Virus record (IMG/VR): IMGVR_UViG_3300035665_000001
Location: 124,001-188,000 of that record
Reading direction: 5' to 3' (one strand)
DNA length: 64,000 nt
Part shown: one piece after another, positions 22,345 through 47,086 of the stretch
Numbering within the stretch: the first letter of the stretch is position 1
How the letters are laid out: every line of letters starts with the position of its first letter
Translations under genes and position numbers: made by a program
The notes under the pieces: generated by a model
Seen by the model: only the letters and a program-made list of their open reading frames with translations
Told to the model about the DNA's origin: nothing
The model's database searches: none

Positions 22345-22451
22345 ATAACATTCTGTTATAATTGACATTTTGTCCCCACTCAAAATTAAATTTGTCTGGG
22401 GATTTTTTGTGCTCGCCGATAAATAATTTTTAATATAATGTGGAGTATAAA

Positions 22452-31456: not shown

Positions 31457-31942
31457 TTAATCACTTGTTTTTTCTAATTTCGATTTTATTGCAAATGTTA
31501 AAATACCACCTAAGTAACTAGGAGCAATATTATAGTTATTTGCTTGTGAACCTAAACTAGACATAATTATCGTTGTTATATGGTTTGTTACATCTTCTTG
31601 ACTGATTTCCTGGTTGGTTTGTCTCACAATAAATTTTCCAGGATTATTAGAAAAATTGAATATTACTGTAACTATGTTGTTTGCAACTTTTACTTCCTTA
31701 ACATTTAATTCATTAGTTAGAGTTTTTTGTAAGTTAACACCCAGTTGTGATGAAACTTTATAACTTTCTTTACCAATACCATCACTCGAACTTTTTATTT
31801 TATCCGTTATACGTTGTGGTTTATTTGTAGGTGCTGTTGATGTTGGTTTATTAGTACCTGCATCTGTTGGTTTTACATCTGTAGAAACCGCAGGTTGTGT
31901 ATCATCCTCGAATATAATATTCTTTAAATCTTTAAGTAGCAT
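31457..31942 (-). CDS. Putative late/virion protein
   Basis: Start at MLLKDLKNIIFED, downstream of the late motif at 31978-31984. Confidence 0.55.
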   Translation of the reverse strand: MLLKDLKNIIFEDDTQPAVSTDVKPTDAGTNKPTSTAPTNKPQRITDKIKSSSDGIGKESYKVSSQLGVNLQKTLTNELNVKEVKVANNIVTVIFNFSNNPGKFIVRQTNQEISQEDVTNHITTIIMSSLGSQANNYNIAPSYLGGILTFAIKSKLEKTSD

Positions 31943-31984
31943 ATGGTATATCCTATTTAGTTTACTGTTATATCTTATATTTAT

Positions 31985-32031
31985 CCTCGCTCTACCGAAA
32001 AACCCCATCCCTTTAGGGTGGGGTAATTGAC
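31985..32031 (-). mobile_element. IS200/IS605-type (IscB-like end) miniature scar
   Basis: GTCAATTACCCCACCCTAAAGGGATGGGGTTTTTCGGTAGAGCGAGG then ATAAATA; near-identical to 46234-46279. Confidence 0.65.
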
Positions 32032-32038
32032 CTGACTA

Positions 32039-33223
32039 TTAACAAATAATTTCTAGTCCTTCCATATTTTTCAATCTTGAATAATCGGGATTCAACCAGC
32101 AAATGTGATGTGCATCAACCCAAGGATAGTATCCATTAACAGTATTTCCTTCTAAAACCAGCGAATAAAACATTTCAGTTCTATATCTATGTTCAACTTT
32201 AATTTTTTTACTTCCATCTGTAAGGCTAAGTATTTTTTCATCTCTTGATAAATCCAATGCAGGGACATATCCTTTATTTGGTACTGACACTAACGTATCT
32301 CTGGAAACCGAATAAACGTACTCATAATTAACTTTTTTAGAATTTTTAGATGAGTGCATTTGTATTATTATATTTTGATCTCTTTTACCAACAATACCTT
32401 GTATTCGATAAATTGTATTAAATGGTCCTGGAACATATAAACCTAAATTTGGATGATGTGATAAAACCTCTTTAAGGAAAAAAAAGTTTGTTTGAATTTG
32501 CATCATTTCTCTACGGTTTGTATCAATAAATTTATTATAGTAGTTGGTTATGAAATTATATTCATTGACATCAGGTGGATTATTAGCTAATGCACTGTTT
32601 CTATAGACGATTTCAACAATTCGTAAAGCTTCGTGGTATGCATCATCTCTTTCCATACCTTCAGAAATATTGAAATCGGTTAATCCATAAATTAATTCTG
32701 TGTTGAGTGCTTTACCTTTAAAGGTTGAAGTAACTGCATCTTCATAAGTCATACCACCCATATATATTTTTTCCATTACGGATCTAGAATCAAATCCCAT
32801 GGAAACATTTAACATTGGTGAATTTGGTATCGATATGGTGTTTCTCATTTTTTTTGCAGTTTTTGCAGTTCTATCAAATTTACCACCAACTCCCCACCAA
32901 CCTAAAACATAACTGTTGAATTTTTCATTATAATCATAATATATGTTGCCTACAACATCTGCATAGTTGGATTCTTTTTTTTCATATTGTTTTCCATTAG
33001 CAAATACGTTTGATTCTTGATGCCACCCCATGATTTTTAATGGTCTCGTGTAACCAGTATCATGTTTGCGATTGTTTTCCAATACTTTTACTTCATCAAC
33101 TCCTAGAACATCCGCTGTTCTCCATCGCCTTTTTGTTCTCTCATGCCAATTCTTAAAATTATAATATGTGTAAGTATCTTTTGGTGCTATCCAAATTTTT
33201 AACAATGTTGATGCAGAAAACAT
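32039..33223 (-). CDS. Hypothetical protein
   Basis: 394-aa ORF; AAGGAG RBS; TGTATAAT upstream. Confidence 0.7.
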   Translation of the reverse strand: MFSASTLLKIWIAPKDTYTYYNFKNWHERTKRRWRTADVLGVDEVKVLENNRKHDTGYTRPLKIMGWHQESNVFANGKQYEKKESNYADVVGNIYYDYNEKFNSYVLGWWGVGGKFDRTAKTAKKMRNTISIPNSPMLNVSMGFDSRSVMEKIYMGGMTYEDAVTSTFKGKALNTELIYGLTDFNISEGMERDDAYHEALRIVEIVYRNSALANNPPDVNEYNFITNYYNKFIDTNRREMMQIQTNFFFLKEVLSHHPNLGLYVPGPFNTIYRIQGIVGKRDQNIIIQMHSSKNSKKVNYEYVYSVSRDTLVSVPNKGYVPALDLSRDEKILSLTDGSKKIKVEHRYRTEMFYSLVLEGNTVNGYYPWVDAHHICWLNPDYSRLKNMEGLEIIC

Positions 33224-33269
33224 AAAACTCCTTAGTTAAATAAAACATATTCTATTATTATACAATTTA

Positions 33270-34082
33270 TCAAAATATTAATAGTTGTTTCAGTTTTTTA
33301 GGTAATATAGTTTCATCTTTAGTGTACTTATACATTTCAATTTTTATTTTATCTGGACTGTTTTTATGTTTTGCAATGGCAATTTTTCTTGATGTTGTGG
33401 TACATTTATCAAAAAAATCAACTAAAATTTTTGTTGATGTATCTTTGAATTGTGTTAAAACGTTAACAATCTGGTCTTCAAATACATCATCATCCGATAA
33501 CTGATATTCCACTTCATCTCGATACCAATCATACATGTCATCGTCAGACATAGAACTGAATAATTTATGTAAAAAAACAATTGTTTCTTTGTTTGCTATG
33601 TTATACGAGATAGTTATAGTTGCGAATATTCGGTTAAAAGGCTCATCTGTAATATCAAACCATAATGGTCTCCCTAAAACACAATAATGTAAAAAACTAT
33701 ATGGGGATTTTGAATTAAAATACTTGATCCAGTCCAATTTATTACTGGTACCTACACCAGGGGTAAGTTTAAATAGGTGATTTAAAGTATTAAAATGATC
33801 ATCTGTATTTACAAAATTATCAAGATAAACAACATTCGCAAATTTATTCAAAACATCTAAATTGAATGGTCCCTGTTGACTACATATTAAACTTTTATAA
33901 AAAGAGATTCTATTAGACGCTTTTTCTATATTCTCCGATATTTCAAAAATCTCCAATAATTCTGTATTTGAAAAAGTGAATTTACTTAGAAATTCACTAT
34001 TCCTCGCAGTTATAGATGTATTAAAAAATTCTTTGATCTGTTTTGATTTATCCACAATATCACTTTTTTTTAATTTACTCAT
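33270..34082 (-). CDS. Helical-repeat protein with C-terminal LPKKLKQLLIF tag
   Basis: Tail IAKHKNSP..IK..MYKYTKD...LP matches the 15817 and 16737 tails; TAAATA repeats upstream. Confidence 0.65.
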   Translation of the reverse strand: MSKLKKSDIVDKSKQIKEFFNTSITARNSEFLSKFTFSNTELLEIFEISENIEKASNRISFYKSLICSQQGPFNLDVLNKFANVVYLDNFVNTDDHFNTLNHLFKLTPGVGTSNKLDWIKYFNSKSPYSFLHYCVLGRPLWFDITDEPFNRIFATITISYNIANKETIVFLHKLFSSMSDDDMYDWYRDEVEYQLSDDDVFEDQIVNVLTQFKDTSTKILVDFFDKCTTTSRKIAIAKHKNSPDKIKIEMYKYTKDETILPKKLKQLLIF

Positions 34083-34258
34083 AAACACCCTCGTTTGTTT
34101 TTTTATTTATTTATTTATTTGTTATTCTCTTGTCATAAGACCTCACACTTTAATTCGTTGCACAAGTTAAAAAAATTGATGGTGTACATTCATATACCAA
34201 ACGTGAATCGTGAAAAAATCATCAACTCTAAATTAAAGTTGATGATTTTGATTAGATG

Positions 34259-34648
34259 TTAAATCTTTCTACCTTTACCCATTTTTTCTAACTTAGCTAT
34301 CTTTCGCAACAATGCAAATTCAATAGTATCGAAGTCGTGAGGTAAAACCAAATGATCCATAATATTTCCTAAAAAGGCTTCATTTTGAGTAAGTGAATAT
34401 TCAATTTGTTCTGATGTACCAATCAATAGAAATTTAACATTATTATTTCTACCAAATTTACGAAATACAAATCTAACATCCAACCCTATCAAATCAAAGG
34501 TAATAACGGGTAGGATTATGATAGTTTTTTCCGACGTTTCCCAGTTTTCATGAAATTCAGTCCATTTTGAAAATTTCTGTATTTCTTTTTCATTCGAAAA
34601 TAAGTTTCTAAATGGTCTATAGTAATTGTAGAATATTTTTTTCATCAA
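34259..34648 (-). CDS. Hypothetical protein, possibly a degenerate receiver-like fold
   Basis: IIILP...DLIGLD...KFLLIG pattern only; weak. Confidence 0.4.
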   Translation of the reverse strand: MMKKIFYNYYRPFRNLFSNEKEIQKFSKWTEFHENWETSEKTIIILPVITFDLIGLDVRFVFRKFGRNNNVKFLLIGTSEQIEYSLTQNEAFLGNIMDHLVLPHDFDTIEFALLRKIAKLEKMGKGRKI

Positions 34649-34998
34649 CGTTCAAATGTTTTGAATAATTTTTCTCGATTACCTAATTTAATTTTATATG
34701 TATCACAGGTATTTTTTACTAGAAATACCTCCTCTTTAATTTGTACATTGGTAATATCTCTAATATAGTAAATGCCCGTATTTATACCATTAATATCTGC
34801 AACAGTAAGTTGCATTCTTGGTAAATCGTTGAAAGATGTGGGTATTTCTTTCGCATCACTTAAAAATCCAACAGATGTTTTACTTGCAATATCACACACG
34901 GTTGGTACGTTAAATGGAAATAAAATAAATGTTGCAAAACCAACTATAAGTATGATTGGAGTTAAAACTTTGCATGTTTCCCATAAAATTTTTTTCAT
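34645..34998 (-). CDS. Membrane-anchored hypothetical protein
   Basis: N-terminal hydrophobic helix; GAGG RBS. Confidence 0.6.
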   Translation of the reverse strand: MKKILWETCKVLTPIILIVGFATFILFPFNVPTVCDIASKTSVGFLSDAKEIPTSFNDLPRMQLTVADINGINTGIYYIRDITNVQIKEEVFLVKNTCDTYKIKLGNREKLFKTFER

Positions 34999-35018
34999 TT
35001 TTTTCCTCGTTATATTTT

Positions 35019-35591
35019 CTACATAAGTCTCAAACCCTTATTGAATGAGTTTTTACCTTTTAAATTGTTGATGATTGTTTTTGGTGATTTTTGTGGTTTT
35101 TCACTGTTGTCATCATTATCTGTTGTGGAGTCGTTATATTGTGAATCATTATTTTCTTTGTTTTTAGTGAGTTTAGTATATTCTTTTTGTTTTGAATTTG
35201 CCCTTACATCAGTATAAGCATTTTTATCGTGTGATACCGTTTCTTCTCCATTTTCATTTGTAGTTGGGATAAATGATAATGTTCCCCAATCAGTTTTAAA
35301 AAAAACATATGAACCAACACCGGATGAATCTCTGGTTTTTAATAATTTTGCTCTAATAATTCCTGAATCTCTTGATGCTGAATTTGGGATGAACGCTAAT
35401 ACATTATCAGCACTTTGAATTTTTGCGATACCACCTTGAATATTTTCTTCTGAAATATCATTGGTATCACCACTAGCACTATTATGGGTAAGTATGTCAT
35501 TAGTAAAAAATAAGTGATCACCATCAACAGTAATATCTCTGGTTTTTCTAATACCAATTTTTTGAATATTTACGATTTCATCCAATACCAT
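35019..35591 (-). CDS. Split-intein IntC (37 aa) fused to the C-terminal extein of a T4 gp41/DnaB-like helicase
   Basis: MVLDEIV.I..IG...T.DITVDGDHLFFTNDILTHN|S resembles gp41-type IntC; extein has ISEENIQGG..KIQSAD and KLLKTR; own RBS and TGTATAAT. Confidence 0.85.
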   Translation of the reverse strand: MVLDEIVNIQKIGIRKTRDITVDGDHLFFTNDILTHNSASGDTNDISEENIQGGIAKIQSADNVLAFIPNSASRDSGIIRAKLLKTRDSSGVGSYVFFKTDWGTLSFIPTTNENGEETVSHDKNAYTDVRANSKQKEYTKLTKNKENNDSQYNDSTTDNDDNSEKPQKSPKTIINNLKGKNSFNKGLRLM

Positions 35592-35675
35592 TATTTCTCC
35601 CAATTAAATTGATTTAGTTGTTTTTAAGAATTATACAATAGTTTTACTTGTAATGATATTAGAAATATGATGCTA

Positions 35676-35736
35676 TGAGAGTTCATTTACCAATGCTCTG
35701 CAGAAATGCCACGTCTTGTAGGGTGGGGTGGTTCAC
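35676..35736 (+). mobile_element. TnpB/IS605-type right-end remnant inside a hairpin
   Basis: GAAATGCCACGTCTTGTAGGGTGGGGTGGTTCAC flanked by a perfect 15-bp inverted repeat (35658-35672 / 35739-35753). Confidence 0.5.
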
Positions 35737-35762
35737 AACATCATATTTCTAATGTAATGGTG

Positions 35763-36863
35763 TTAAGTGTTATTCTGATTGACTTGTGATATTTCTTGAA
35801 GACCAACTTTTTTAATTTCTTCAAAACATTTTTCAAACGCTTCTACTATAGTAGGATCAAATTGTGTTCCTGCACCTGCTATGATAATTTCTTTTGCCTC
35901 GTCAAAACTTACTTTTTCTCGGTATGGTCTTTTTGAAATTAAAGCCTCTAAAGTATCAATTATGTGAATTAATCTTGCAGATATTGGTATTTCAAATCCA
36001 CTCAATCCTTCTGGATACCCTGTTCCATCCCATTTCTCATGATGATAATGTGCCATTTCAATCGCAGTATCAATGTATGTAGTTACTTCTGGTTTCATCA
36101 ATAGTTCGTCTTTAACAAATTCTAATGCAACACATCCCAATCGTGTATGTTCCTGCATGATATGATTTTCATTTTCTGTATATTTATCCCTTTTTAAGAG
36201 TGTATTGTCTCGAATACCTACCATACCTATGTCATATAATGTCGCAGATAAACAGATATGTTCAACAAATTCAGATGTTAAATCATAAATATATTCTTTA
36301 TTTTTAGTAAGCTGATTGACTAAAATTTTAATATACTCTTTTATGAGTGAACTATGTTCAAATGCATTAGCGTGGTTAAATTTTGTCAAGTATGACACCG
36401 CCAATAATACTACATCGGTAAATTTATTATAATCCGTTTGAAATCGATTATTGTCATTCTCTAATTTCACAATGTATTCTTGTAATTCTTTTATTTTTGT
36501 GTTTGCTTTTATCTGATTGTTGACCCTAGCTAAAAAAATCAATGGTGTAATTGGTTTACGCATATAATCTACTGCACCTAATTCAAATCCTCGAAATTCA
36601 TCGGAAATATCATCTAATTCAGATATAAAAATTACGGGTGTGTTTTTATATCTGGAATCGTTTTTCAACAGTTCAAACATATCATACCCAGTTTCAAAAG
36701 GCATGATTACATCTATTACAAAAAGTGATATGTTATTAGCTACGGATATTATTTTTTTTGCTGATTTAACAGAGCTTGCAGTTTTAACTTTGTAAAATGG
36801 TTTTAAAATTCCACGAATGGTATCGACACTTTCACCATCATCATCGATTATCAATATAGTCAT
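35763..36863 (-). CDS. Response regulator REC + HD-GYP (RpfG-like) with degenerate catalytic site
   Basis: ILIIDDD, IDVIMP..TGY, GAVDYMRKP; LYDIGM replaces LHDIGK; HHEKWDGTGYP, RPYR, G.QFDP intact. Confidence 0.9.
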   Translation of the reverse strand: MTILIIDDDGESVDTIRGILKPFYKVKTASSVKSAKKIISVANNISLFVIDVIMPFETGYDMFELLKNDSRYKNTPVIFISELDDISDEFRGFELGAVDYMRKPITPLIFLARVNNQIKANTKIKELQEYIVKLENDNNRFQTDYNKFTDVVLLAVSYLTKFNHANAFEHSSLIKEYIKILVNQLTKNKEYIYDLTSEFVEHICLSATLYDIGMVGIRDNTLLKRDKYTENENHIMQEHTRLGCVALEFVKDELLMKPEVTTYIDTAIEMAHYHHEKWDGTGYPEGLSGFEIPISARLIHIIDTLEALISKRPYREKVSFDEAKEIIIAGAGTQFDPTIVEAFEKCFEEIKKVGLQEISQVNQNNT

Positions 36864-36893
36864 AATTTCCCCACTTGGTTTGAATGAACTTGG

Positions 36894-37244
36894 TTAGTTA
36901 TTGAAATTTAACAGATTATTATTTTGTTCCAATGGTTTCCACATTTTTGCAAATTTCAAAACTTTCGGGACATCATCTTTTTGTGTTGGACAAACAACTA
37001 TACTTGAGTCTTTACCACCTAAAGTATGTAATTCATGACCGATACACACATTAGGTAATTCTTTTATTTTATCAAACTCTTTTTGTGTAACTCGAAGAAC
37101 AACTTTTCGAAATGATTCAGATAACCATTGTTGATAATTTTCATTATCGCTAAATTTAATATGTGCCCATAAAACACTATGTGCAACTAATGTTGGTGTC
37201 ATAAAATCAGGAAATTCATCCAAAACGGCAATATACATCTTCAT
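36894..37244 (-). CDS. Peptidyl-tRNA hydrolase 2-like phage protein
   Basis: KMYIAV, VAHS, WL..SFRKVVLRV...EF, CP motifs. Confidence 0.6.
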   Translation of the reverse strand: MKMYIAVLDEFPDFMTPTLVAHSVLWAHIKFSDNENYQQWLSESFRKVVLRVTQKEFDKIKELPNVCIGHELHTLGGKDSSIVVCPTQKDDVPKVLKFAKMWKPLEQNNNLLNFNN

Positions 37245-37337
37245 AATTTTCTCTTTTTAAGATTTAATATGTTGATTATTTATAAGTTCACCGATTAACT
37301 CAATTAATATCATTTTTTTGTAAAAAAATAGTTTAAA

Positions 37338-38189
37338 TTATTTTTTCATATCAAAATTTTTGATAAAGTATTCTTCTCTGAGCACTTCAATGGTATTGTC
37401 TTTTTTCCATTGAATTGCCACGGTTTTTTTAACTAATGCATCATCTCTTTCTTTTCCTAATCCAATCACTATTACGTAATTAGATTTAGATTCTAAATGT
37501 GCTGATGATTTTGACCATAAACTACCTATCTCAATATTACAAGTTGTGTTGGGGTTTTCTTCTTGAAAGAGTATTTCTGTTTTTAATATGTTTGAATTTC
37601 TATCTGCCCAATGAACTACAACACACATTTCTTCTGCTTTTGGTGGTGCGGTATTCCAATCAGGAATAAATTTTTCATATTTGGTGAATGATTGATAATT
37701 AAGAAATTCTTTAATATCTTCGACAGAATGAAAATGTTTATTCTCTGTAAAATGATAAACCATTTTGTTTATTTGGTCTTCATTCAAACCAACTGCAACT
37801 TCAACCGTAGTAGGTTTAACAAAATCATCTCGATTATTTACCAACCATTTTTTTATTTTGGTAATATTTGAGTTTATATCACCATCTAAAAATCGTGCTA
37901 AACGATGTACTTGTTCATTTGTCAACCCAACCGCAACTTCTTTCTCCACCACATCGTCAAATTTCTGTAAATTTAAATAAGATTTAATGCACTCTAAAAT
38001 AGTTATCGTGCCTTTTCTTTGCCATATTGCATTTTCTAAATCTATGATTTGACTATCACTCAAGCCAACAACAGACTTGGTTGGTTTAGGGTTATTTAAT
38101 TCTACCCACCGGGTAATAGCTTTCTTATAATCGAAAATTGTATCAACTGATAAAAATTTTGCTAAACTTTCAATTTCCAATGAATTCAT
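37338..38189 (-). CDS. Hypothetical protein with internal repeats
   Basis: Three V(A/V)GL...Q(I/V) units. Confidence 0.6.
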   Translation of the reverse strand: MNSLEIESLAKFLSVDTIFDYKKAITRWVELNNPKPTKSVVGLSDSQIIDLENAIWQRKGTITILECIKSYLNLQKFDDVVEKEVAVGLTNEQVHRLARFLDGDINSNITKIKKWLVNNRDDFVKPTTVEVAVGLNEDQINKMVYHFTENKHFHSVEDIKEFLNYQSFTKYEKFIPDWNTAPPKAEEMCVVVHWADRNSNILKTEILFQEENPNTTCNIEIGSLWSKSSAHLESKSNYVIVIGLGKERDDALVKKTVAIQWKKDNTIEVLREEYFIKNFDMKK

Positions 38190-38343
38190 TTTTTCTCTCT
38201 TTTAAGGTTATTTTTGCAAATTAGTTTGATGAGGAGTGTTTTTTAAATGTTAAAATGTGGCATTTTTTTGGTTTTCGTAGGGAAGGATTGTAGTATCTTA
38301 ATGTTGATGGATAACACCAACATTAAGATGTAATTTTTGTTGC

Positions 38344-38829
38344 TTAATCAATAAATGATGATGCTTTTCCATTATCATCAATTAGAATATAAGCCGAACT
38401 TCTACCGGCATATGCCCTAACAACAATAGAACCGTTTGCTCGATAAGGAGGAACAGTATCTAATGACCACCCTTTATTTTCTTCAACATATTTTTTTGCG
38501 ATACTCAAAGCATCATCTTTTTCTTTTTTTGATAACTCAGTAGTTTTATCATCTTTAACACTATCGGCAGTTTGAGATTTTTTTGTTATTTCTGATACAG
38601 GTTTATCAACACCTTCACCAAACTTTTCATCTGCCGCAGAAATATTTTGTTTAGCAGTAGCACCACTGGTATTGTAGATTCCATAAAACCAACTTTTTTC
38701 TTCTGCATCCCATTTCAAACCCATTTTTTTTGCAATTTCTTTATCTTTGAAATCAACTTTATAATACCGTTTTGTTACCAAAGTGGGGGCTTGTTTTGTT
38801 TCATTAATCAATAATTCACGAACTTTCAT
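38344..38829 (-). CDS. Late protein with DUF5710-like domain
   Basis: Y.V.FKDKE.AKK.G.KWD...KSWF; MKVRELLINE leader; late motif at 38861. Confidence 0.55.
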   Translation of the reverse strand: MKVRELLINETKQAPTLVTKRYYKVDFKDKEIAKKMGLKWDAEEKSWFYGIYNTSGATAKQNISAADEKFGEGVDKPVSEITKKSQTADSVKDDKTTELSKKEKDDALSIAKKYVEENKGWSLDTVPPYRANGSIVVRAYAGRSSAYILIDDNGKASSFID

Positions 38830-38907
38830 TTAGAATTCTCCATTTACTATATTTTATCAGTATTTATATTTTTCATCAAAAAAAGTGAATGATTTTCTGT
38901 GATTTCA

Positions 38908-39990
38908 TTACACTATTTTCGTTTTATTTTCGAAGATATACTGAATTTCATCAAATTCATCAAAATTTGGTAGTTCAAAGTTTTTTACCTGGTTTGAAAT
39001 AATATTATACTCTAATTTTTTATGATCTCGGTTATTTAAATTTTGAGTTATTTGTTTTTCACCAATTAAGAAAACCACAGCCTTATGATTATACTGTGTG
39101 GTTGGTATTTTAATAAGTTTATTCAAGCGATGTTCCTTAGTTAAATTTGTCATATCAACTAAAATGTTTTCTTTGTTTTTTACTGCATTTAGTAAATCTT
39201 TTAAACTCTGGTCGTGAGCTTTTTTAATATTTTTTTTATAATCGACAGAATCGTATCCCATTTTTTTATTATAAAAAAAGTTGTCAACTGATATTATACT
39301 ATAATTTGAAAAATCTGAATTGTTTTTGACAAACGTTGATTTTCCACTACCAGATAACCCAATTAAAAATACAGCATCCAATTTTCTTTTTTCCCTAAAC
39401 TGTTGTTTATTATATGGGATATAGTTTTCTAAATGAGTGAACTGGTTGTCAATAAATACCAGCTCATCATTAAAATCGGGTGAAATTTCTCTACCGTACG
39501 CATCAGCCTTAACAAAATCAATAAGTTCTTTTAAAAATTCCGGTTGGTGTCCATAACATAAATCCAAATTTTTTATTTTTTCCTCAATAGGAATTTTGTT
39601 CCAAAGAGTACCGTGTCTAGCAATTAATTGCAATGTTAATAAAAAATCGATTTCAAATTCTGTTGAGGCATGTTTTAGAATATCTATACTTTTGACCATT
39701 GATACGTTTTCATGGTCATAAAACGCTACTCGCCCGTTCTCTTTTTCATATCTTACATAAACTTTACCGATATCATGCAGTATTGCCGCAAAAATATGGT
39801 TATTATTATTTAATGCTAAATCCAATACCATTTCAGTATGACACCATACAGTTCCTTCAAAATGAAAAGGATTTTTACTACCATTACTATGTGTATGATC
39901 ACATAATACCATAGCATTGTATAATTCAACATAATTGGTTTTAAACCAATTCACAATTTTTTGTTTTTCAACTGTCATTAGATTAGCCAT
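38908..39990 (-). CDS. HD-domain phosphohydrolase fused to a P-loop (polynucleotide-kinase-like) domain
   Basis: H.EG.VW.HT.MV, LHDIGK, F..HE..S, AD..GR; GLSGSGKST, VDMTNL. Confidence 0.85.
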   Translation of the reverse strand: MANLMTVEKQKIVNWFKTNYVELYNAMVLCDHTHSNGSKNPFHFEGTVWCHTEMVLDLALNNNNHIFAAILHDIGKVYVRYEKENGRVAFYDHENVSMVKSIDILKHASTEFEIDFLLTLQLIARHGTLWNKIPIEEKIKNLDLCYGHQPEFLKELIDFVKADAYGREISPDFNDELVFIDNQFTHLENYIPYNKQQFREKRKLDAVFLIGLSGSGKSTFVKNNSDFSNYSIISVDNFFYNKKMGYDSVDYKKNIKKAHDQSLKDLLNAVKNKENILVDMTNLTKEHRLNKLIKIPTTQYNHKAVVFLIGEKQITQNLNNRDHKKLEYNIISNQVKNFELPNFDEFDEIQYIFENKTKIV

Positions 39991-40343
39991 TCTGGATTTT
40001 CTATTTGGATTTTTTTATATAATTCTATAAAATGTGAAAAATCTATACCATTGATTGACTCAAAATTTTTGAAAAATTCTTTAGCCCATAATTTTTCAGC
40101 TATCTCTTTATCTTGTATTTTAAACAGATAATTATAATTTGCAGGTGGAATATCAATATATACTGTAAGAAATTCCATATTATCGCTTTTGTCAAACTTA
40201 ACTGTGCGAAATGTGGCGGATTTATCTTGCAGTAAATCTACTAAAAATACTTTTTCAAGTTTAATAGTTTGTACCGCGGTATACGTTGGAATAAAAACAT
40301 ACCAATAGTAATTATGTGGCACTAGATCACTGGGTTTTATCAT
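39978..40343 (-). CDS. Hypothetical protein ending in NPEWLI
   Basis: ORF in an operon. Confidence 0.6.
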   Translation of the reverse strand: MIKPSDLVPHNYYWYVFIPTYTAVQTIKLEKVFLVDLLQDKSATFRTVKFDKSDNMEFLTVYIDIPPANYNYLFKIQDKEIAEKLWAKEFFKNFESINGIDFSHFIELYKKIQIENPEWLI

Positions 40344-40349
40344 AACATA

Positions 40350-40610
40350 TTATTCCAAATAGTCATTTGTTTTAACTGGGTGTTTAAATGTTGATACCCA
40401 TTTTTCAATACAGTCATCACAAATTTCAAAATCCCAGGTATCCATATCAAATTTTGAACCATATCCAAATAAAATTGAAAAATTGGTTATGTTTGAACAT
40501 ACAAATTGATATTCATCTGTGATATGGGTTTCTTTACCACAACAATCACAAGCCACCATAGATACTATTTTTTCTGTTGTAGTTACTTCTTTTTCAATGT
40601 ATTTAATCAT
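40350..40610 (-). CDS. Small zinc-finger protein
   Basis: CDCC...GYGSKFD.....ICDDC. Confidence 0.7.
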   Translation of the reverse strand: MIKYIEKEVTTTEKIVSMVACDCCGKETHITDEYQFVCSNITNFSILFGYGSKFDMDTWDFEICDDCIEKWVSTFKHPVKTNDYLE

Positions 40611-40911
40611 GATTAATTTTCTTTTTTTTGGTTTTAATTTTAGAATCACATAGAGAAGACATTAGATCCTCCTGTTGTACCATATATTCTATAAATTTTT
40701 TATGAGACATAACATCGAAACAAACATAATCAATTATATTTTTAAAATTTGGAATTGCAACTATTAATTCTTCATCATTTGATAGAGTTTCAATGGCATA
40801 TTTAAATTCTAAAATTGATGGTTTGTGGTTATATCCATACGCCATAACATAATTATAATTATTATCCATAAACACCAAATAATATTCGAACTCTTTAAAA
40901 GTTGTTGTCAT
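40603..40911 (-). CDS. Hypothetical protein
   Basis: AGGA RBS. Confidence 0.6.
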   Translation of the reverse strand: MTTTFKEFEYYLVFMDNNYNYVMAYGYNHKPSILEFKYAIETLSNDEELIVAIPNFKNIIDYVCFDVMSHKKFIEYMVQQEDLMSSLCDSKIKTKKKKINHD

Positions 40912-40988
40912 TTTTTAATCCTGTAGAGTTATTGAAAAAACACTCCCATAACTGGGTTAAGTAGATGCAATGTATTATTTTCAATTCA

Positions 40989-41249
40989 TTATACATTTTT
41001 TTTAAAAACAATTGGATCTGACGCTTTTCCTTTTTCACGAGTATTGGAAACCTGAAATTTTCTTTGGTGGTTATTATCAACAGCAACACCCGACCATTCA
41101 ATACTTTCTGAAAAATCACCATAAAAATTACTTTCATTGTTATGGATTGCTTCATAATTTACAACATATTCTCTACCACCCACAATGAATATATCACCAC
41201 TTTTTAACTCTTTAAGTTCATCAAAAGTATATCTGACCATGTTTTTCAC
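40989..41249 (-). CDS. Hypothetical protein
   Basis: ORF coupled to the upstream gene. Confidence 0.5.
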   Translation of the reverse strand: MKNMVRYTFDELKELKSGDIFIVGGREYVVNYEAIHNNESNFYGDFSESIEWSGVAVDNNHQRKFQVSNTREKGKASDPIVFKKNV

Positions 41250-41250
41250 A

Positions 41251-41880
41251 TTATAATTTAAAATTTGATGTAATGTTTAATAAACTACTAAACAAATTAA
41301 GTATATTCAAATATAAATCCATTGCTGCCTCTATTGGAGTAACATCGGTGTATAGAACTCGCTGTGTATCATAAATCATGTAAAATGAAAACATAATAGC
41401 CACACAATATGAAATATATAATGATAGTAATGAACTTCCTATAAATATGTTGATTACCATTAATAGTAACATACCAATTAACACCCAAAATAAATAAGTG
41501 CCCATAGTTAAGAAATTTTTACGAGTGGTTGATGCGTAAAGTGTCAAACCACCAGTGATAAACGTTGTTAATGTTAATGATTGTATAATCACATCACTTG
41601 ATCCAATACTGATAAAATGATTTAATGTAGGTACTAAAGTTATACCTGTAAATAAAGTAAAAAGATAATATGCCACTGGAACTTTTTTAAATATAAACCA
41701 AAAAAGAATCAAAAATTCCAACAATATTAAAATGAAAAATGTAACAGCTGTCAATACATGTGTGTATGGTAATATTGCCCATGATCCAAGCATTGCCAAT
41801 AAGACCCCATTAAACACATACGAGTATGTTTTTCCTAATTTTTGTAAATTGTCACTTGTAGTATTACTAACTAATTGCAT
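41251..41880 (-). CDS. BAX inhibitor-1/YccA family membrane protein
   Basis: About 7 hydrophobic segments; FT..TG.TL.P, YDTQ, AA..LYL.ILNLF. Confidence 0.88.
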   Translation of the reverse strand: MQLVSNTTSDNLQKLGKTYSYVFNGVLLAMLGSWAILPYTHVLTAVTFFILILLEFLILFWFIFKKVPVAYYLFTLFTGITLVPTLNHFISIGSSDVIIQSLTLTTFITGGLTLYASTTRKNFLTMGTYLFWVLIGMLLLMVINIFIGSSLLSLYISYCVAIMFSFYMIYDTQRVLYTDVTPIEAAMDLYLNILNLFSSLLNITSNFKL

Positions 41881-41912
41881 GTTTGTACCCTCTATATATT
41901 AAAATTAATTTT

Positions 41913-42206
41913 TCACCTATTTATCAATTCGTACAGTTCGTCACGTAAAGTTTCGATTTCAAATTCCATTGCATTAATTTTTGCTTTCAATTCATTAATC
42001 TTTTCTTCTGAAATACGTTCCTCTAAAAATAAATCAATCATATCATTTATTAATACTAGTTCTGAAAAATCAGTTTTAAAAATCAACTCCGATTTAACAT
42101 TATTCCTTGTTCGATACACCGAAATTCCAGAATCTTCTTTTTCAATACACAAGGTAAAAATTGTTTTACTGTTTTCTGATAAGAAACTATTGTCATCTCT
42201 TAACAA
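41913..42206 (-). CDS. Hypothetical coiled-coil protein
   Basis: ORF in an operon; start uncertain. Confidence 0.5.
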   Translation of the reverse strand: MLRDDNSFLSENSKTIFTLCIEKEDSGISVYRTRNNVKSELIFKTDFSELVLINDMIDLFLEERISEEKINELKAKINAMEFEIETLRDELYELINR

Positions 42207-42219
42207 TGGTTCGAGTGAT

Positions 42220-43080
42220 TTAGGAATCTGTTTTTTCCTTTTCTAACGTATTTTTAATGATGGTAGTGTCAAATACTTGACCTCTATAAATTACTCCCGC
42301 AAAACCATCGTTTATTACCTCTGTATTTAATTCATCAAAAGTTTTACCATTTAACATATAATGGTATAACCACATTTTTTTCTTATATACCTCAGGAATA
42401 TCTTTTAATTGGTGGTATTGACAATGTACACCATTTTCATAATTTGCAAATTCACATTCTTGGAAAATAATATCGGCATATTCCCAGAATGACATTAATC
42501 GCCAAAAATCAAATTGTGTGTCCCCACTGTAAAAAAACTTAATTCCATCTTCCTGCCATTTCAAACCAAATGCAGGTACTTCATCTTCATCATCAACAAT
42601 ATGTGGTAGTCTAACTGGATAAAATTCAGTTCCTAGAAATTGAAATCCATCTCTAGGTCTAATACGTCTAACATCGAAGTAATCATCCAATCCAACTTTA
42701 CTATTTTTATTATGACACCCCATATTTCCTTTTAAAACATTCTCCCATAAAACATCCATTACCTTTGGGTTTGCAAATAACATAGGTTTTTCTGCGTTAG
42801 GATTAAAAAATGTTTTGAATCCAATAAGTTCGAGACCACCATTATGGTCGCCATGGTTGTGCGTAATAAAAATATGTTTAATATCTGTTACATCAATATT
42901 GTTATACTCTAAAGCCTCACCAATATGATAACCTACATCAATTAACAGATTAGAAGTAACTACTTCAGTTACTCCTTCCTCTGATACAATAGTTCCTGTC
43001 TTGGTTATTAAAATGTTGGAATGGAAATTTTCTTTTATTGAAACAAATGCACTTCCACTACCTAAAAATTTAATTATCAT
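42220..43080 (-). CDS. Metallo-beta-lactamase-fold hydrolase (RNase Z/phosphodiesterase-like)
   Basis: FLGSGSAF, LLIDVG, ITHNHGDHNGG, YSGDT, IFQEC, H, LYHY. Confidence 0.88.
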   Translation of the reverse strand: MIIKFLGSGSAFVSIKENFHSNILITKTGTIVSEEGVTEVVTSNLLIDVGYHIGEALEYNNIDVTDIKHIFITHNHGDHNGGLELIGFKTFFNPNAEKPMLFANPKVMDVLWENVLKGNMGCHNKNSKVGLDDYFDVRRIRPRDGFQFLGTEFYPVRLPHIVDDEDEVPAFGLKWQEDGIKFFYSGDTQFDFWRLMSFWEYADIIFQECEFANYENGVHCQYHQLKDIPEVYKKKMWLYHYMLNGKTFDELNTEVINDGFAGVIYRGQVFDTTIIKNTLEKEKTDS

Positions 43081-43092
43081 TCATTTTCACCA

Positions 43093-43386
43093 TTATGACC
43101 CAGTAAAATAACCCATTTCATCTTCATCACCATCATATTCTTCATTACCATAATTTTCTTCATCTGCAAGATCTTCTAAGATTTCTTGTAGATTATATTG
43201 TGTATCAGAAATTTTTTCTGAAATTTTTTGATATTCAAAATCATCAATATCATCAATAATGGTATCTAATTGAGTTACTAAATCGTCTAAAGTATTCAAT
43301 AATTGTTCAATAATATGTTCGTCTTTAATTGTTTCTGCTTCTAATGAGATTTCTGCCAAAGTTGATTTAATGGTTGCAATAGTCAT
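43093..43386 (-). CDS. Highly acidic small protein
   Basis: About 29 Asp/Glu versus 4 Lys in 97 aa; GGAG RBS. Confidence 0.65.
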   Translation of the reverse strand: MTIATIKSTLAEISLEAETIKDEHIIEQLLNTLDDLVTQLDTIIDDIDDFEYQKISEKISDTQYNLQEILEDLADEENYGNEEYDGDEDEMGYFTGS

Positions 43387-43427
43387 AAACTGTCTCCAAG
43401 TTTTTATGTTATTTAAAAATAGTTGTT

Positions 43428-43976
43428 TTAAAGACCGATGAGTGGTGGAACATCATCATCGGAATAGTCTGAGTTTGGGTTCATCATATGTTTAATCTGA
43501 TCTAAAATCTCTTTTTGAGTCCCTTTTATACCTGGTTGATCCATATTTAAATTGTTGATGGTTACTGATTTTATTTCAAGTTTCTGTTTTTCAATTTCCA
43601 TTTTCTCTTTTTGTAGAGTGAAATTCAAAAGAGCCTTCGATGCGTCACTAGCATTTCCCAATGCTTGTTGTGCTACCTCCGAAATTCTCGCAGCAGATTT
43701 ATCATCAATTTTACCCATAATTTCAATTAATTCATCATGATCGTTTAAACTTTTTTGTGCTACTTTCATTAGAATTATTTTTGAAAAATCTGCAAGACCA
43801 AGATCTGTTTCCATTGCTCGAAACATTGAAATATCTTGATCCGTAATCAATGAAGAGGAATAAATGGGTTGGTTTGTCAAAGGATTTATAGAAACTACTG
43901 ATTCTTCAATTTTTTTATCGTCAACTATATTATCGATATTGAGCATCTTTGATAATTTCTTACTTACTATATCCAA
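43428..43976 (-). CDS. Probable terminase small subunit (T4 gp16-like)
   Basis: AARISEVAQQ.L..A.DA...LL, NNL...GTQKEIL pattern; late motif at 44009; AGGAG RBS before TTG 43976; near a terL piece. Confidence 0.55.
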   Translation of the reverse strand: MDIVSKKLSKMLNIDNIVDDKKIEESVVSINPLTNQPIYSSSLITDQDISMFRAMETDLGLADFSKIILMKVAQKSLNDHDELIEIMGKIDDKSAARISEVAQQALGNASDASKALLNFTLQKEKMEIEKQKLEIKSVTINNLNMDQPGIKGTQKEILDQIKHMMNPNSDYSDDDVPPLIGL

Positions 43977-44169
43977 AATGAATCTCCTTTTTATTGTTAT
44001 AAAATACCTATTTATCCAAAATACAAAACCATTATACAAAAAATATTTATTTTTTTGCGTTTATTATTTTAAAAAATAATCATTAACGTCAACATATAGT
44101 AAATTTTGTGGGACGGTGCTTTTTTGTAAAATAGGTAAAAACAACGTGTGGTTACACTGGAAAAAATAT

Positions 44170-45351
44170 ATGAAATCCGATAATTCAATCAGCTATCATT
44201 ATGTTTACAAAATTACAAATATTAATCCTCCTGATGAAAAAAAGTATTACATTGGTGTTAGAACAACCAAAAATAGAACACCTCAAGAGGATAGTAGTTA
44301 CATGGGATCATCAAAACATTTAAAATCCGCGATTAAAAAACAAGGAAAACAACATTTTTTTAAGGAAATATTATCTACTTGGAATTCAAGGGATGAAGCA
44401 AATGTAGAAGAAATAAGATTACATTCATTGTACTCAGTTTCGAGTAATGTCGAATATTACAATATGGCAGAAGCTGTAAGTGTTGGGTTTTGTACATACG
44501 GAAATGTTCCCGTTATCGATACAAATACGGGTAAAACACTTTCAGTGTCGTTAAAAAATTTTAATGAAACTTGTCATTATGTAACAAATTCAAAAGGTTG
44601 GGTATCTGTTATTGATACCCGAACAAATGAAACTACAAGAGTAACAGTGGAAAATTATCATCGATATGGATATTATAAGTGTATCAACACAGGTACCTTA
44701 GTGGTTATTGATACTCGAGACAAAAAGCGAAAAAAAGTGTCGGTAGAAGATTATTACAAACACGAACATTTTGAATGTTTGAGTGTGGGAAAATTAACGG
44801 TTAAAGATACTCGCACAAACAAACTAGTTAAAGTTTCAGTTGATGATTACTATAGATATGATTATTTTCAACATCCCTTCATAGGTCAAGTTACAGTAAT
44901 TGATACACGTGATGGAACAGTGAAAAATGTAAGTAGAGAAGAATTTTTAAATAATAATCATTTTGTTTCACCCTCAAAAGGTAGAGTCAGTGTTATCGAT
45001 TTGCGAGATGGTGTTAAAAAAATGGTTTCACAAGATGAATATCAAAATAATGAGTATTTCGTTTCTCCTGTCAAAGGGTTAGTTACAGTTATTGATACTC
45101 GTGATGGAGTAACTAAAAATGTCACGAGAATGGAATATCAAAGCACCGATAATTATATTTCGGTGGCAAGTAAAAAAGTGAATATTTACAATGCCTCACA
45201 TGAGTTAAAATATACCATTTGGGGAAAATTTAGAGAAACCTGTGTCAAACTAAAAATCCCTGCGAGATTATTTAAAGAATCGTGTAACAATAACTCAAAA
45301 CCCATTGTACACAAAAAATTTAATGGTTGGTATGCGATTGAAGTAAAATAA
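44170..45351 (+). CDS. Free-standing GIY-YIG homing endonuclease with seven 32-aa repeats
   Basis: YVYKITN...YYIG.R, YMGSS..L..AI.K.G...F.KEIL, YYN; repeats every 96 nt from 44500. Confidence 0.85.
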   Translation: MKSDNSISYHYVYKITNINPPDEKKYYIGVRTTKNRTPQEDSSYMGSSKHLKSAIKKQGKQHFFKEILSTWNSRDEANVEEIRLHSLYSVSSNVEYYNMAEAVSVGFCTYGNVPVIDTNTGKTLSVSLKNFNETCHYVTNSKGWVSVIDTRTNETTRVTVENYHRYGYYKCINTGTLVVIDTRDKKRKKVSVEDYYKHEHFECLSVGKLTVKDTRTNKLVKVSVDDYYRYDYFQHPFIGQVTVIDTRDGTVKNVSREEFLNNNHFVSPSKGRVSVIDLRDGVKKMVSQDEYQNNEYFVSPVKGLVTVIDTRDGVTKNVTRMEYQSTDNYISVASKKVNIYNASHELKYTIWGKFRETCVKLKIPARLFKESCNNNSKPIVHKKFNGWYAIEVK

Positions 45352-45357
45352 TCCAGC

Positions 45358-46110
45358 TTATTGGTATTCATCCCCATAGTACAAATCCTGAATATCGATT
45401 TCTCTGATTTCACCTGTTTTTTTGTTTCTAATAGTAATCTGTGTTTTACCATCCAGACAGTAAACAAATTTTAGCGATTTACCCCTAGCTGCGTTCGCAG
45501 TTGTAGCTTCCGCAATGATACGCATACCATTATCAAATTCTACCGAGGTTTCATTGTTCTTAATCATCCCAGGTTTTAACCAGTTTGGAGCAGAATAATA
45601 CATATCTTTTATTCGCTTCAATACTTCAACAGAATGTGCTTGTTTGTGAGCAACAATTAAAATATCCCCTTTTGCTACAGGAAAACATGCTTCATAAAGT
45701 AAATAAAAAGCACCAATGGTTGTATTATGACTGAGAATGCCATTCGTATAATATCGATGATCTTCACTTTCTACCGAAAGGTCATACATAGGTGTTGATT
45801 CGATTGTTTTCTTTACAGAAATTATTTTTTCTAATCCATCTTCTGTTACAATGAAATCATCAACGGTTAAATCTTTTACAAAAATTGAATTGTAATTACT
45901 ATCAAAAACAATATGATTATCTGCACATTCCAATATGTGATTTTCAGTAATCACTTCCCATACACAATAATCAACGGTCTTATTACTACCAATTATTTTT
46001 TGAAATCCCGTGTCTGTATTTACTGACCACCCATCAACTAAAAGTTGTTCAATAAATTTTTGTTTTTCATTCATACTGTATCCATTAAGTTTTTCACAAT
46101 TCAAAATCAT
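45358..46110 (-). CDS. terL: Terminase large subunit piece 2: IntC - ATPase extein (88 aa) - IntN
   Basis: ECADNH, MYDLSV...YYTNGILSHN|TT; extein AHK, NETSVEFDNG.RI.A.AT...A.RGKS; then CLDGKTQITIRNKKTGEI..IDI.DLY*. Confidence 0.9.
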   Translation of the reverse strand: MILNCEKLNGYSMNEKQKFIEQLLVDGWSVNTDTGFQKIIGSNKTVDYCVWEVITENHILECADNHIVFDSNYNSIFVKDLTVDDFIVTEDGLEKIISVKKTIESTPMYDLSVESEDHRYYTNGILSHNTTIGAFYLLYEACFPVAKGDILIVAHKQAHSVEVLKRIKDMYYSAPNWLKPGMIKNNETSVEFDNGMRIIAEATTANAARGKSLKFVYCLDGKTQITIRNKKTGEIREIDIQDLYYGDEYQ

Positions 46111-46233
46111 CGATTATTTCTAATTATACAATTGGTTGTGAAATAATTACAAAAACAGTCAAATTTTTTTGATGATTAGCTATCAAATATCTATACCACA
46201 TCGGTAAAAGTTTGATGACTTATGGTTGGGGTT

Positions 46234-46279
46234 GTCAATTACCCCAACCTAAAGGTCGGGGTTTTTCGGCAGAGCGAGG
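46234..46279 (+). mobile_element. IS200/IS605-type (IscB-like end) miniature scar
   Basis: GTCAATTACCCCAACCTAAAGGTCGGGGTTTTTCGGCAGAGCGAGG then ATAAATA. Confidence 0.65.
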
Positions 46280-46318
46280 ATAAATATCAATATGGTTCAC
46301 TTTAAATGGGTGGTAACA

Positions 46319-47086
46319 ATGATTAAAGATATTATAGTTGGTTCAAGTAGTTATACAGGTGTTCCTGCAACTGGTGCACAAATTACGTTCACAACACCTG
46401 GAACTTATACGTGGATATGTCCATCCAATGTAACTACGGTTTGTGCAGTTGCCATTGGTGGTGGTGGTAGTAGTGGAGCATACTATACTGGTGGTGCTGG
46501 TGGTGGATTATCTTATTTAAACAATATCGCTGTAACGCCAGGTCAATCTTATACCGTAGGTGCAGGTGGTATCGGTTCAGGTGGTATCGGTTGTATTGCA
46601 GGTGGTATCGGTTCAGGTGGTATCGGTTGTATTGCAGGTGGTATCGGTTCAGGTGGTATCGGTTGTATTGCAGGTGGGAATAGTTCAGTATTTGGTATGG
46701 TAGCTGGTGGAGGTGGTGGAAATAGTGCCCCTGGTTATAATAATGCACCACCACAAGGTGGTTATGATAATGCGGGAACTAGCGGGAGATCACCATACAA
46801 CTACTCTACTAACAGTTCAATTTACAACGTAGGTGGTGCTGGTGCTGGTGGTACTGGCATTTTTGGTGGAACAGGTGGTGGAACAGGTGGTGGAACAGGT
46901 GGTTTGCCTGGCGGTATAGATAACTCCAATAATACAACTACTATCAGTGGTTCGGTTGGTATTGGTGGTGGTGGCGGATCAGGGTGTGGATATGACTATA
47001 TAGATTCAAAAGGTGGGAATGGAGCAGTTAGAATAATTTGGGGTTCTGGTAGAGCTTTTCCTAATACAAATACGGAGGATTTATAA
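46319..47086 (+). CDS. Glycine-rich fibre protein (rearranged paralog of 18566)
   Basis: MIKDIIVG leader; PGTYTWICP...; GGNGAVRIIWGSGRAFPNT. Confidence 0.7.
   Translation: MIKDIIVGSSSYTGVPATGAQITFTTPGTYTWICPSNVTTVCAVAIGGGGSSGAYYTGGAGGGLSYLNNIAVTPGQSYTVGAGGIGSGGIGCIAGGIGSGGIGCIAGGIGSGGIGCIAGGNSSVFGMVAGGGGGNSAPGYNNAPPQGGYDNAGTSGRSPYNYSTNSSIYNVGGAGAGGTGIFGGTGGGTGGGTGGLPGGIDNSNNTTTISGSVGIGGGGGSGCGYDYIDSKGGNGAVRIIWGSGRAFPNTNTEDL
46562..46677 (+). repeat. Perfect 36-bp tandem repeat, three copies plus a partial
   Basis: GCAGGTGGTATCGGTTCAGGTGGTATCGGTTGTATT at 46562, 46598, 46634. Confidence 0.95.

What the first reader, a model, noticed from the sequence alone, without database searches (positions are those of the whole stretch)
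31978..46286. Miniature IS200/IS605-type scars sit directly against late promoters
Seen: two near-identical 46-47 bp elements (31985-32031 minus, 46234-46279 plus) and decayed copies (7664-7697, 20768-20792) all end immediately at ATAAATA. Established: GTCAAxTACCCC..CTAAAG..GGGG resembles IscB-element ends, and ATAAA is a described IscB TAM. Inferred: collapsed elements whose target motif coincides with the phage late promoter. They would insert harmlessly upstream of late genes, may supply a hairpin terminator and could seed rearrangements.
Basis: partly seen in the sequence, partly recalled or inferred. Interest (0 to 1): 0.65.

Follow-up and report, generated by a model that had tools for sequence, protein, structure and literature searches.

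The report
Collapsed transposon ends at phage late promoters
The short repeats are real: they are the fused left and right ends of an IS605-family (TnpB-type) transposon that invades relatives of this T4-like jumbo phage, and its insertion motif TTTAT is the complement of the phage late-promoter core ATAAA(TA), so the scars sit directly against late promoters.

Summary
The window holds three complete 46-47 nt mini-elements (A 46234-46279 +, B 31985-32031 -, E 35691-35736 -). It also holds two left-end fragments (7671-7697 -, 20770-20785 +). More copies lie elsewhere in the 306-kb phage record.

Each mini-element has three pieces: about 20 nt of an IS605-family left end (LE), one hairpin, and the last 8 nt of the right end (RE). 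A complete 1.42-kb element with these same ends occurs in metagenomic relatives of this phage, at four or more different sites. It is built as TTTAT|LE, an internal late promoter, a 416-aa TnpB gene, then RE.

The RE half also equals positions 1-29 of Rfam HEARO, the IscB guide RNA.

ATAAATA is strongly enriched, in the sense direction, upstream of genes, and the phage encodes a gp55-like late sigma factor. A distant relative has an empty site B that keeps ATAAATA.

This genome has no TnpA, TnpB or IscB. A and C keep an LE-type hairpin; B and H keep an RE-type one. That points to independent internal collapses, probably immobile scars. In the direction of the late gene, the hairpin plus U5 looks like an intrinsic terminator. 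No terminator activity, promoter activity or mobility was measured.

The parts
46234..46279 (+). Mini-element A, 46 nt. Read on the + strand it is RE' (GTCAATTA), then a hairpin, then LE'. The hairpin is of the LE type.
46280..46286 (+). ATAAATA. It is both the TAM (TTTAT on the other strand) and the late-promoter core for the gene starting at 46319.
46319..47086 (+). Glycine-rich putative structural gene downstream of A. GGGTGG lies before the ATG at 46319.
31985..32031 (-). Mini-element B, 47 nt. Its hairpin and last 8 nt are identical to the RE of the complete TnpB element in L033. It begins 7 nt after the stop of the 394-aa gene.
31978..31984 (-). ATAAATA, the TAM and late-promoter core for the gene 31457-31945. 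It is retained at the empty orthologous site in L043.
31457..31945 (-). 162-aa gene downstream of B. Orthologues occur in L040, L041 and L043.
32039..33223 (-). 394-aa gene upstream of B. It is not a transposon gene and has orthologues without the element in relatives.
35691..35736 (-). Mini-element E, a second subtype. Its RE' starts GTGAACCA, like the elements in L052 and L053. The hairpin is decayed, and it abuts GTAAATG (35684-35690).
7671..7697 (-). Left-end fragment F. The 3' arm of the hairpin and the LE tail survive, and the RE part is lost.
7664..7670 (-). ATAAATA before the gp25-like baseplate gene 7266-7643.
20770..20785 (+). Left-end fragment G, a decayed LE tail.
20786..20792 (+). 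ATAAATA before the gene 20826-21737.

Best explanation
The repeats are internally collapsed copies of a non-autonomous IS605-family transposon that colonises this lineage of T4-like jumbo phages. In relatives the intact element is about 1.42 kb. It inserts immediately 3' of TTTAT. It consists of a left end with a nested hairpin, its own ATAAATA late promoter, a 416-aa TnpB gene, and a right end with a hairpin followed by TAATTGAC. TTTAT is the complement of ATAAA, so an insertion into a late promoter (N)ATAAATA places the left end directly against ATAAATA and leaves that core intact. T4-type late promoters need no upstream element (established knowledge), so such insertions should be tolerated. 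The LE and RE hairpins are similar direct repeats. A deletion between them removes tnpB and the guide-RNA region and leaves a scar of 46-47 nt: the LE tail, one hairpin, and the 8-nt RE end. Read toward the late gene, that scar is a G+C-rich hairpin followed by five U, which would act as an intrinsic terminator just upstream of the promoter. Shown here: homology of both ends, the TAM, the empty site, the absence of transposon genes, and the promoter-motif statistics. Inferred: the deletion mechanism, the immobility of the scars, and the terminator and promoter activity.
For: Ends. In TnpB orientation, B reads TTTAT, then 18 nt of LE tail (one mismatch to L033's LE), then a hairpin plus TAATTGAC that match L033's RE exactly. 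A carries the same LE tail, an LE-type hairpin and the same RE end. L033:548-1798 is a TnpB (Pfam HTH_OrfB_IS605, OrfB_IS605, Cas12f1-like_TNB; phrog_506, 3.5e-81).

Presence in relatives. The same TnpB at 94-97% identity, with the same LE, lies in L031, L032 and L036 with a different flank after ATAAA in each. L004, L031, L035 and L036 are relatives of this phage at about 66-75% nucleotide identity. Further family members sit in T4-like contexts, with TTTAT|LE and an internal ATAAATA in L052 and L053; L054 has a truncated LE start and an imperfect motif. RE and LE hairpin stems co-vary across the family.

Link to IscB. The RE' half equals HEARO positions 1-29. IscB copies in other phage contigs have the same layout and are flanked by GATAAA.

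Empty site. The L043 orthologues of both genes flanking B are separated by 54 nt that contain ATAAATATA and no element.

Promoter. 94 of 201 ATAAATA lie within 60 nt sense-upstream of a start codon, against 14 of 201 for the complement. A gp55-like late sigma factor is present (E 5.6e-6, phrog_234, 5e-19). The TerL fragment is T4-superfamily-like.

Enrichment. 4 of 8 copies abut ATAAATA, although only 7.2% of ATAAA sites are ATAAATA (p = 1.5e-3).

Terminator. B is picked up by the terminator scan. Its hairpin folds at -14.6 kcal/mol, or -18.9 for the 63-nt stretch.
Against: No TnpA was seen in this genome or in any fetched locus, so no transposase is identified. The record is estimated 85% complete, so a full element could lie in the missing part. 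The empty site comes from a distant relative (54% amino-acid identity in the flanking protein), so loss there rather than gain here cannot be excluded. Promoter and terminator activities therefore rest on motifs only. The hairpin of A has a mismatch and fails the simple terminator scan. H lacks a clean U run. C is not upstream of a gene.
Confidence: 0.82

Rival explanations
1. The blocks are active miniature transposons (PATE/MITE-like), copied around the genome as 46-47 nt units by a TnpA supplied in trans by the host or a co-infecting element.
For: There are several copies with the same overall layout at unrelated sites, all at the TAM. PATEs of IS605-family elements are documented. A 338-nt gene-less derivative exists in relatives, and a homologue lies at 190336-190662.
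Against: Each mini has only one hairpin, and the sequence 5' of the RE hairpin (TTAGAAG in full elements) is lost. In the IS608 model (established knowledge) that sequence pairs with the RE cleavage site, so precise excision is unlikely. A and C carry LE-type hairpins while B and H carry RE-type hairpins, which fits separate collapses better than spread of one founder. No Y1 transposase is present.
Confidence: 0.1
2. They are remnants specifically of IscB (HEARO) elements.
For: The first 29 nt match the HEARO consensus. The exact 22-nt pattern finds genuine HEARO+IscB loci in viral contigs, and those are flanked by GATAAA.
Against: HEARO scores only 13.5-22.6 bits against a cut-off of 83. No IscB is present. 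The LE tail matches TnpB elements exactly but matches the IscB elements only in pattern. The RE is shared by both element types because both use the RE flank as guide.
Confidence: 0.06
3. They are conserved terminator-promoter regulatory cassettes of the phage (PeSL-like) with no transposon origin.
For: The hairpin-plus-promoter architecture between genes resembles PeSLs. The hairpin with a U run is terminator-like.
Against: Both halves are homologous to the ends of a TnpB element. The element is absent from the orthologous site in L043. Copies C, D and J lie antisense or inside genes, where no regulation is expected. PeSLs use sigma-70-type early promoters and number about 50 per genome.
Confidence: 0.02

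Closest known systems
IS200/IS605-family elements with TnpB, and their gene-less PATE derivatives (for example the ISGst elements of Geobacillus stearothermophilus; Meers et al., doi 10.1101/2023.03.14.532601)
   Same: Both have subterminal hairpins at each end and insert 3' of an AT-rich pentanucleotide TAM; TTTAT is the TAM of GstTnpB2. Both lack target duplication, keep the guide-RNA side at the RE, and are mostly non-autonomous without an adjacent TnpA. Gene-less derivatives that keep only the ends are known.
   Different: Here the derivative is reduced to a single hybrid hairpin of 46-47 nt. It lives in a lytic-type T4-like jumbo phage. The full element carries a phage late promoter in front of tnpB, and the TAM is embedded in the host genome's own late-promoter motif.
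HEARO / IscB omega RNA (Rfam RF02033)
   Same: The first 29 nt (GTCAATTA plus the first hairpin with a TAAA loop) match the consensus almost base for base.
   Different: The rest of the 211-position model is absent, the scores fall far below the cut-off, and no IscB is present. The match reflects an RE shared between IscB and TnpB elements.
PeSL terminator/promoter cassettes of T4-type phages (PMC2839356, PMC4122927)
   Same: Both are a short intergenic stem-loop joined to a promoter, and both can insulate and drive the downstream gene.
   Different: PeSLs contain sigma-70-like early promoters, span about 100 bp, number about 50 per genome, and have no reported link to transposons. Here the promoter is the late type and belongs to the target rather than the element.

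Membership tests
IS200/IS605 family (IS605 group) transposon ends | Both ends are homologous to the ends of a complete element that encodes TnpB or IscB | tested here: met
   The LE tail and the RE hairpin plus 8 nt match the L033 element. L033's ORF is a TnpB.
IS200/IS605 family (IS605 group) transposon ends | Insertion immediately 3' of a fixed pentanucleotide TAM, with no target-site duplication | tested here: met
   All copies and the full elements in L031-L036, L052 and L053 abut TTTAT, or TTTAC in subtype 2. The flanks differ and no flanking direct repeat is seen.
IS200/IS605 family (IS605 group) transposon ends | A subterminal hairpin at each end | tested here: not met
   Full elements have both hairpins, with co-varying stems. 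The mini copies keep only one, so they are remnants rather than intact ends.
IS200/IS605 family (IS605 group) transposon ends | A Y1 (HUH) TnpA transposase is available | tested here: not met
   PF01797 is absent from the 306-kb record and none was seen in the fetched loci. A host copy cannot be examined.
IS200/IS605 family (IS605 group) transposon ends | An empty orthologous site exists in a relative | tested here: met
   L043 lacks the element between the orthologues of both genes flanking B and retains ATAAATA.
HEARO / IscB omega RNA (RF02033) | A covariance-model score at or above 83 bits, with an IscB ORF downstream | tested here: not met
   Scores were 13.5-22.6 bits. There is no RRXRR match.
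PeSL cassettes | A sigma-70-type early promoter fused to a stem-loop, in many copies in hyperplastic regions | tested here: not met
   The motif here is ATAAATA (late type), only about 5 complete copies exist, and they derive from transposon ends.
Intrinsic (Rho-independent) terminator | A G+C-rich stem-loop followed by a U run on the transcribed strand | tested here: inconclusive
   B passes the scan. A has a stem mismatch and fails it but still has five U. Fold energies are -17 to -19 kcal/mol with modest z-scores. There is no transcript data.
T4-type late promoter | A TATAAATA-like motif upstream of late genes, plus a gp55-type sigma factor | tested here: met
   The motif is enriched in the sense orientation upstream of starts. 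A gp55 homologue is present. Activity was not measured.

The most novel reading that the evidence does not exclude
An IS605/TnpB lineage has specialised on T4-like phages. Its TAM is the complement of the late-promoter core, so it lands harmlessly upstream of late genes, and it carries its own late promoter to express TnpB with the late genes. Its collapsed ends are then retained as terminator-promoter punctuation. Transposon-end scars would therefore be one evolutionary source of the composite stem-loop/promoter cassettes that structure and shuffle T4-type genomes.
Probability: 0.2. Interest if true: 0.75.

Novelty: new variant of a known kind. Interest (0 to 1): 0.55.

Why it matters
The finding ties two things that are usually studied apart: RNA-guided-nuclease transposons (TnpB/IscB) and the minimal late promoter of T4-type phages. 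Because the transposon's insertion motif lies inside the promoter core, the promoter becomes a safe landing pad. The full element has in turn adopted the phage's late promoter for its own nuclease gene. The single-hairpin scars show how such elements decay. They may also add terminators in front of late genes. In addition, the phage contigs provide natural TnpB and IscB elements with defined ends and a TTTAT-type TAM.

Tried and rejected
- Rfam at gathering thresholds found nothing in the window, and ARAGORN found no tRNA, so the repeats are not a known RNA gene or a tRNA fragment.
- I first suspected that the 394-aa ORF beside B (32039-33223) and the 411-aa ORF at 44116-45351 were TnpB or IscB. 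The first has no family hit and has orthologues without the element. The second is a SegE-type GIY-YIG homing endonuclease.
- Megablast of 8 kb against cultured phages found nothing. Searches of viral contigs with the flanking proteins returned only a near-identical 140-kb contig, which has the same copies.
- The exact LE-tail pattern is absent from 185,579 prokaryotic genomes, so no host copy was found.
- Viral contigs hold no close relative of the L033 TnpB. Cultured phages have TnpB homologues only at about 32% identity or less.
- The glycine-rich protein next to A has no clear orthologues, so no empty site was obtained for A.
- A weak TnpB-like tblastn hit beside copy J (E 0.036) is only a zinc-ribbon-like stretch and was dismissed.
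- The 338-nt short element of L004 shares its first 129 nt with L033's LE region, but its interior shows no nucleotide similarity to the 3' ends of tnpB. Its origin as a simple deletion derivative is therefore unproven.
- Two script calls returned nothing and were repeated later.
Full report
SETTING
The window is bases 124001-188000 of a 306,333-bp IMG/VR virus record with about 30% G+C, estimated 85% complete. Structural genes have baseplate and virion PHROG matches. A terminase fragment finds T4-superfamily phages at 36-44% identity. A gp55-like late sigma factor is present (E 5.6e-6, phrog_234, 5e-19). Together these place it among T4-like jumbo phages.

THE OBSERVATION
A (46234-46279 +) and B (31985-32031 -) align at 91% over 55 nt. 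The 23-nt 3' module, allowing up to 3 mismatches, occurs three times in the window; the 100 shuffles gave none.

Genome-wide fuzzy and BLAST searches add the following:
- a third complete copy in the window, E (35691-35736 -, diverged);
- complete copies C (genome 115435-115480 -) and H (213113-213160 +);
- fragments D, J and one near 116089, plus the window fragments F (7671-7697 -) and G (20770-20785 +).

IS ATAAATA A PROMOTER?
Of 201 ATAAATA sites, 94 lie within 60 nt sense-upstream of a start codon of my simple ORF set. Only 14 of 201 do so for the reverse complement. The 8-mers built on ATAAATA are 10-18 times enriched upstream of genes. The base before ATAAATA varies among gene-proximal sites (T 29, A 41, G 13, C 11). 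With the gp55 homologue, this supports a T4-type late promoter. Activity itself was not measured.

WHAT THE REPEATS ARE
The 5' module (GTCAATTA plus a hairpin with a TAAA loop) was searched as an exact 22-nt pattern in IMG/VR and hit 20 loci.
- Four of these loci are full Rfam HEARO RNAs at 106-147 bits, and the HEARO consensus begins with exactly this module.
- ORFs downstream in L011, L014 and L025 are IscB (RRXRR plus HNH).
- After the stop codon, those elements end in a similar hairpin, a T-rich tail and GATAAA.

The better match came from searching the 3' module in metagenomes.
- Six contigs with about 30% G+C carry the hairpin and the identical tail. Each is followed by ATAAA and then by a different sequence.
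- L004, L031, L035 and L036 are relatives of this phage (about 66-75% nucleotide identity over genes).
- One contig, L033, also contains the 5' module 1.4 kb away on the same strand.
- Between the two modules lies a 416-aa ORF with HTH_OrfB_IS605, OrfB_IS605 and Cas12f1-like_TNB domains.

Read in the TnpB direction, L033 is TTTAT | LE with a nested hairpin | GATATAAATAA | ribosome-binding site and tnpB | RE hairpin | TAATTGAC | flank. The same TnpB (94-97% identity) is cut by contig ends in L031, L032 and L036, which is typical of a multi-copy element.

More distant members (about 60-65% identity) sit beside an anti-Pycsar gene, a patatin gene and an rIIB-like gene in T4-like contexts. L052 lies on the same 42,966-bp contig that carries the orthologue of the gene next to B. 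L052 and L053 show TTTAT|LE, an internal ATAAATA and an RE ending in T(A/G)(A/G)TT(C/G)AC; L054 has a truncated LE start and only an imperfect internal motif. Hairpin stems differ in sequence across the family but always pair.

ANATOMY OF THE MINI-ELEMENTS
In TnpB orientation:
- B is TTTAT, then 18 nt of LE tail (one mismatch to L033's LE), then a hairpin and TAATTGAC that are identical to L033's RE.
- A has the same LE tail, a hairpin of the LE type, and the same RE end.
- C is LE-type and H is RE-type.
- E and H belong to a second LE subtype and abut GTAAA.
- E has the RE end seen in L052 and L053.

Each mini is therefore LE tail plus one hairpin plus RE end, that is, an internal deletion between the two similar hairpins. 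The different crossover positions argue for separate collapses rather than spread of one founder. This last step is an inference.

The outer LE stem seen in full elements and the sequence 5' of the RE hairpin are both lost. By analogy with IS608, where that sequence pairs with the RE cleavage site (established knowledge), the scars are probably not excisable.

The genome holds no Y1 transposase, no IscB, no TnpB and no full HEARO.

WHY THEY ABUT LATE PROMOTERS
TTTAT on the transposon's top strand is ATAAA on the other strand. Insertion into NATAAATA therefore leaves the LE directly against ATAAATA, and the LE contributes the preceding G.

Meers et al. report that the HEARO region is bounded by the RE, that the TAM lies 5' of the LE, that TTTAT is the TAM of GstTnpB2, and that TTCAT is the TAM of GstIscB. 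This geometry fits what is seen here.

Copies that are not at gene starts, and the full elements in relatives, mostly abut ATAAAA or ATAAAG. The trailing TA of ATAAATA therefore belongs to the target, not to the element.

Only 7.2% of the 2781 ATAAA sites are ATAAATA, yet 4 of 8 copies sit at one (p = 1.5e-3). Only 9.3% of ATAAA sites lie within 60 nt upstream of a start (p = 3.9e-3). Whether this reflects targeting or survival of harmless insertions is not resolved.

Full elements in L033, L036, L052 and L053 also lie just upstream of a divergent gene. In L053 the element sits at a clean ATAAATA about 30 nt before the ATG.

EMPTY SITE
Orthologues of the 394-aa gene exist at 47-61% identity. 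In L043 this orthologue is followed after 54 nt by the orthologue of the 162-aa gene. The spacer contains ATAAATATA, and the alignment shows a gap exactly where B lies. The promoter was therefore there independently of the element.

Conversely, the short element of L004 and L035 lies between orthologues of two genes that are adjacent in this genome, at an intergenic region (75293-75461) that has no element.

LIKELY EFFECT
Read toward the late gene, the scar is a 9-bp G+C-rich hairpin followed by five U.
- B passes the terminator scan. Its hairpin folds at -14.6 kcal/mol, or -18.9 for the 63-nt stretch that includes it.
- A has one stem mismatch.
B begins 7 nt after the stop of the upstream gene, so it would end upstream transcription just before the late promoter. 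This is inferred from sequence only.

NOT SHOWN
I found no evidence that the scars seed rearrangements. Gene order differs between relatives, but I found no breakpoint that lies at an element. Read-level tests were not possible.

COMPARISON WITH KNOWN SYSTEMS
The nearest known kind is the PATE-type remnant of IS605-family elements.
- HEARO membership fails on score and on the absence of IscB.
- PeSL cassettes of T4-type phages are functionally similar, being a stem-loop terminator joined to a promoter. They use sigma-70-type early promoters, and the 2010 paper never uses a word beginning 'transpos'.
- TnpB genes are common in cultured phages (589 records) but are only distantly related to this one.
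I found no paper that links an IS605 TAM to the T4 late promoter. That search covers open-access texts only.

Noticed in passing
G000 190336-190662 (-), 2.3 kb beyond the window end; locus L044:837-1163: A roughly 330-nt intergenic block is homologous (83% over 242 nt) to the 338-nt gene-less element of L004 and L035. It has a decayed LE, a GATATAAATAA promoter, about 210 nt of noncoding sequence that folds with z = -3.6, and an RE hairpin ending in GCTTCAC. It may be an orphan guide-RNA-like transcript with no nuclease in the genome.
   Followed up: partly
window 44116-45351 (+) and 45358-46110 (-): A SegE-like GIY-YIG homing endonuclease gene lies directly beside a 250-aa fragment of the large terminase. 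The fragment has a weak Terminase_6N match and a faint intein-splicing hit. The rest of the terminase was not located, so the gene may be split, as in some jumbo phages.
   Followed up: partly
window 35763-36863 (-): The phage encodes a response-regulator receiver domain fused to an HD-GYP-type HD_5 domain. This is possibly a cyclic-di-GMP phosphodiesterase. Mini-element E follows its stop codon.
   Followed up: no
window 22440-25139, 47449-50082, 50243-52855 (+): There are three paralogous structural proteins of about 870-900 aa (baseplate-wedge or virion PHROGs). Two of them lie in gene clusters that open with a gene behind a scar-adjacent ATAAATA promoter (G and A): the glycine-rich gene at A, and a 303-aa gene with PHROG hits of unknown function at G.
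   Followed up: no
window 46224-46249 (+): The flank just 5' of element A (GGTTGGGG) is complementary to the 5' arm of the element's hairpin. This allows an alternative hairpin across the RE end, and it could be a trace of a second, inverted copy.
   Followed up: no
L004/L035/L039 versus L032/L033/L036, LE hairpin: The LE hairpin is flipped between otherwise 90%-identical left ends (loop TTTA versus TAAA, with the arms swapped). This suggests inversion or template switching within the palindrome.
   Followed up: no
L011 and L014 (IMGVR_UViG_3300028364_000014, 237,910 bp): Another jumbo-phage contig carries two full IscB elements, each with a HEARO-type 5' end and each flanked by GATAAAAA. This gives a natural pair for defining the boundaries of an IscB element in a phage.
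   Followed up: partly
G000 29590-29625 (+): A bidirectional terminator-like hairpin has the same arms and TAAA loop as the element hairpin but has neither the LE nor the RE module. It may be a further decayed copy or a case of convergence.
   Followed up: no
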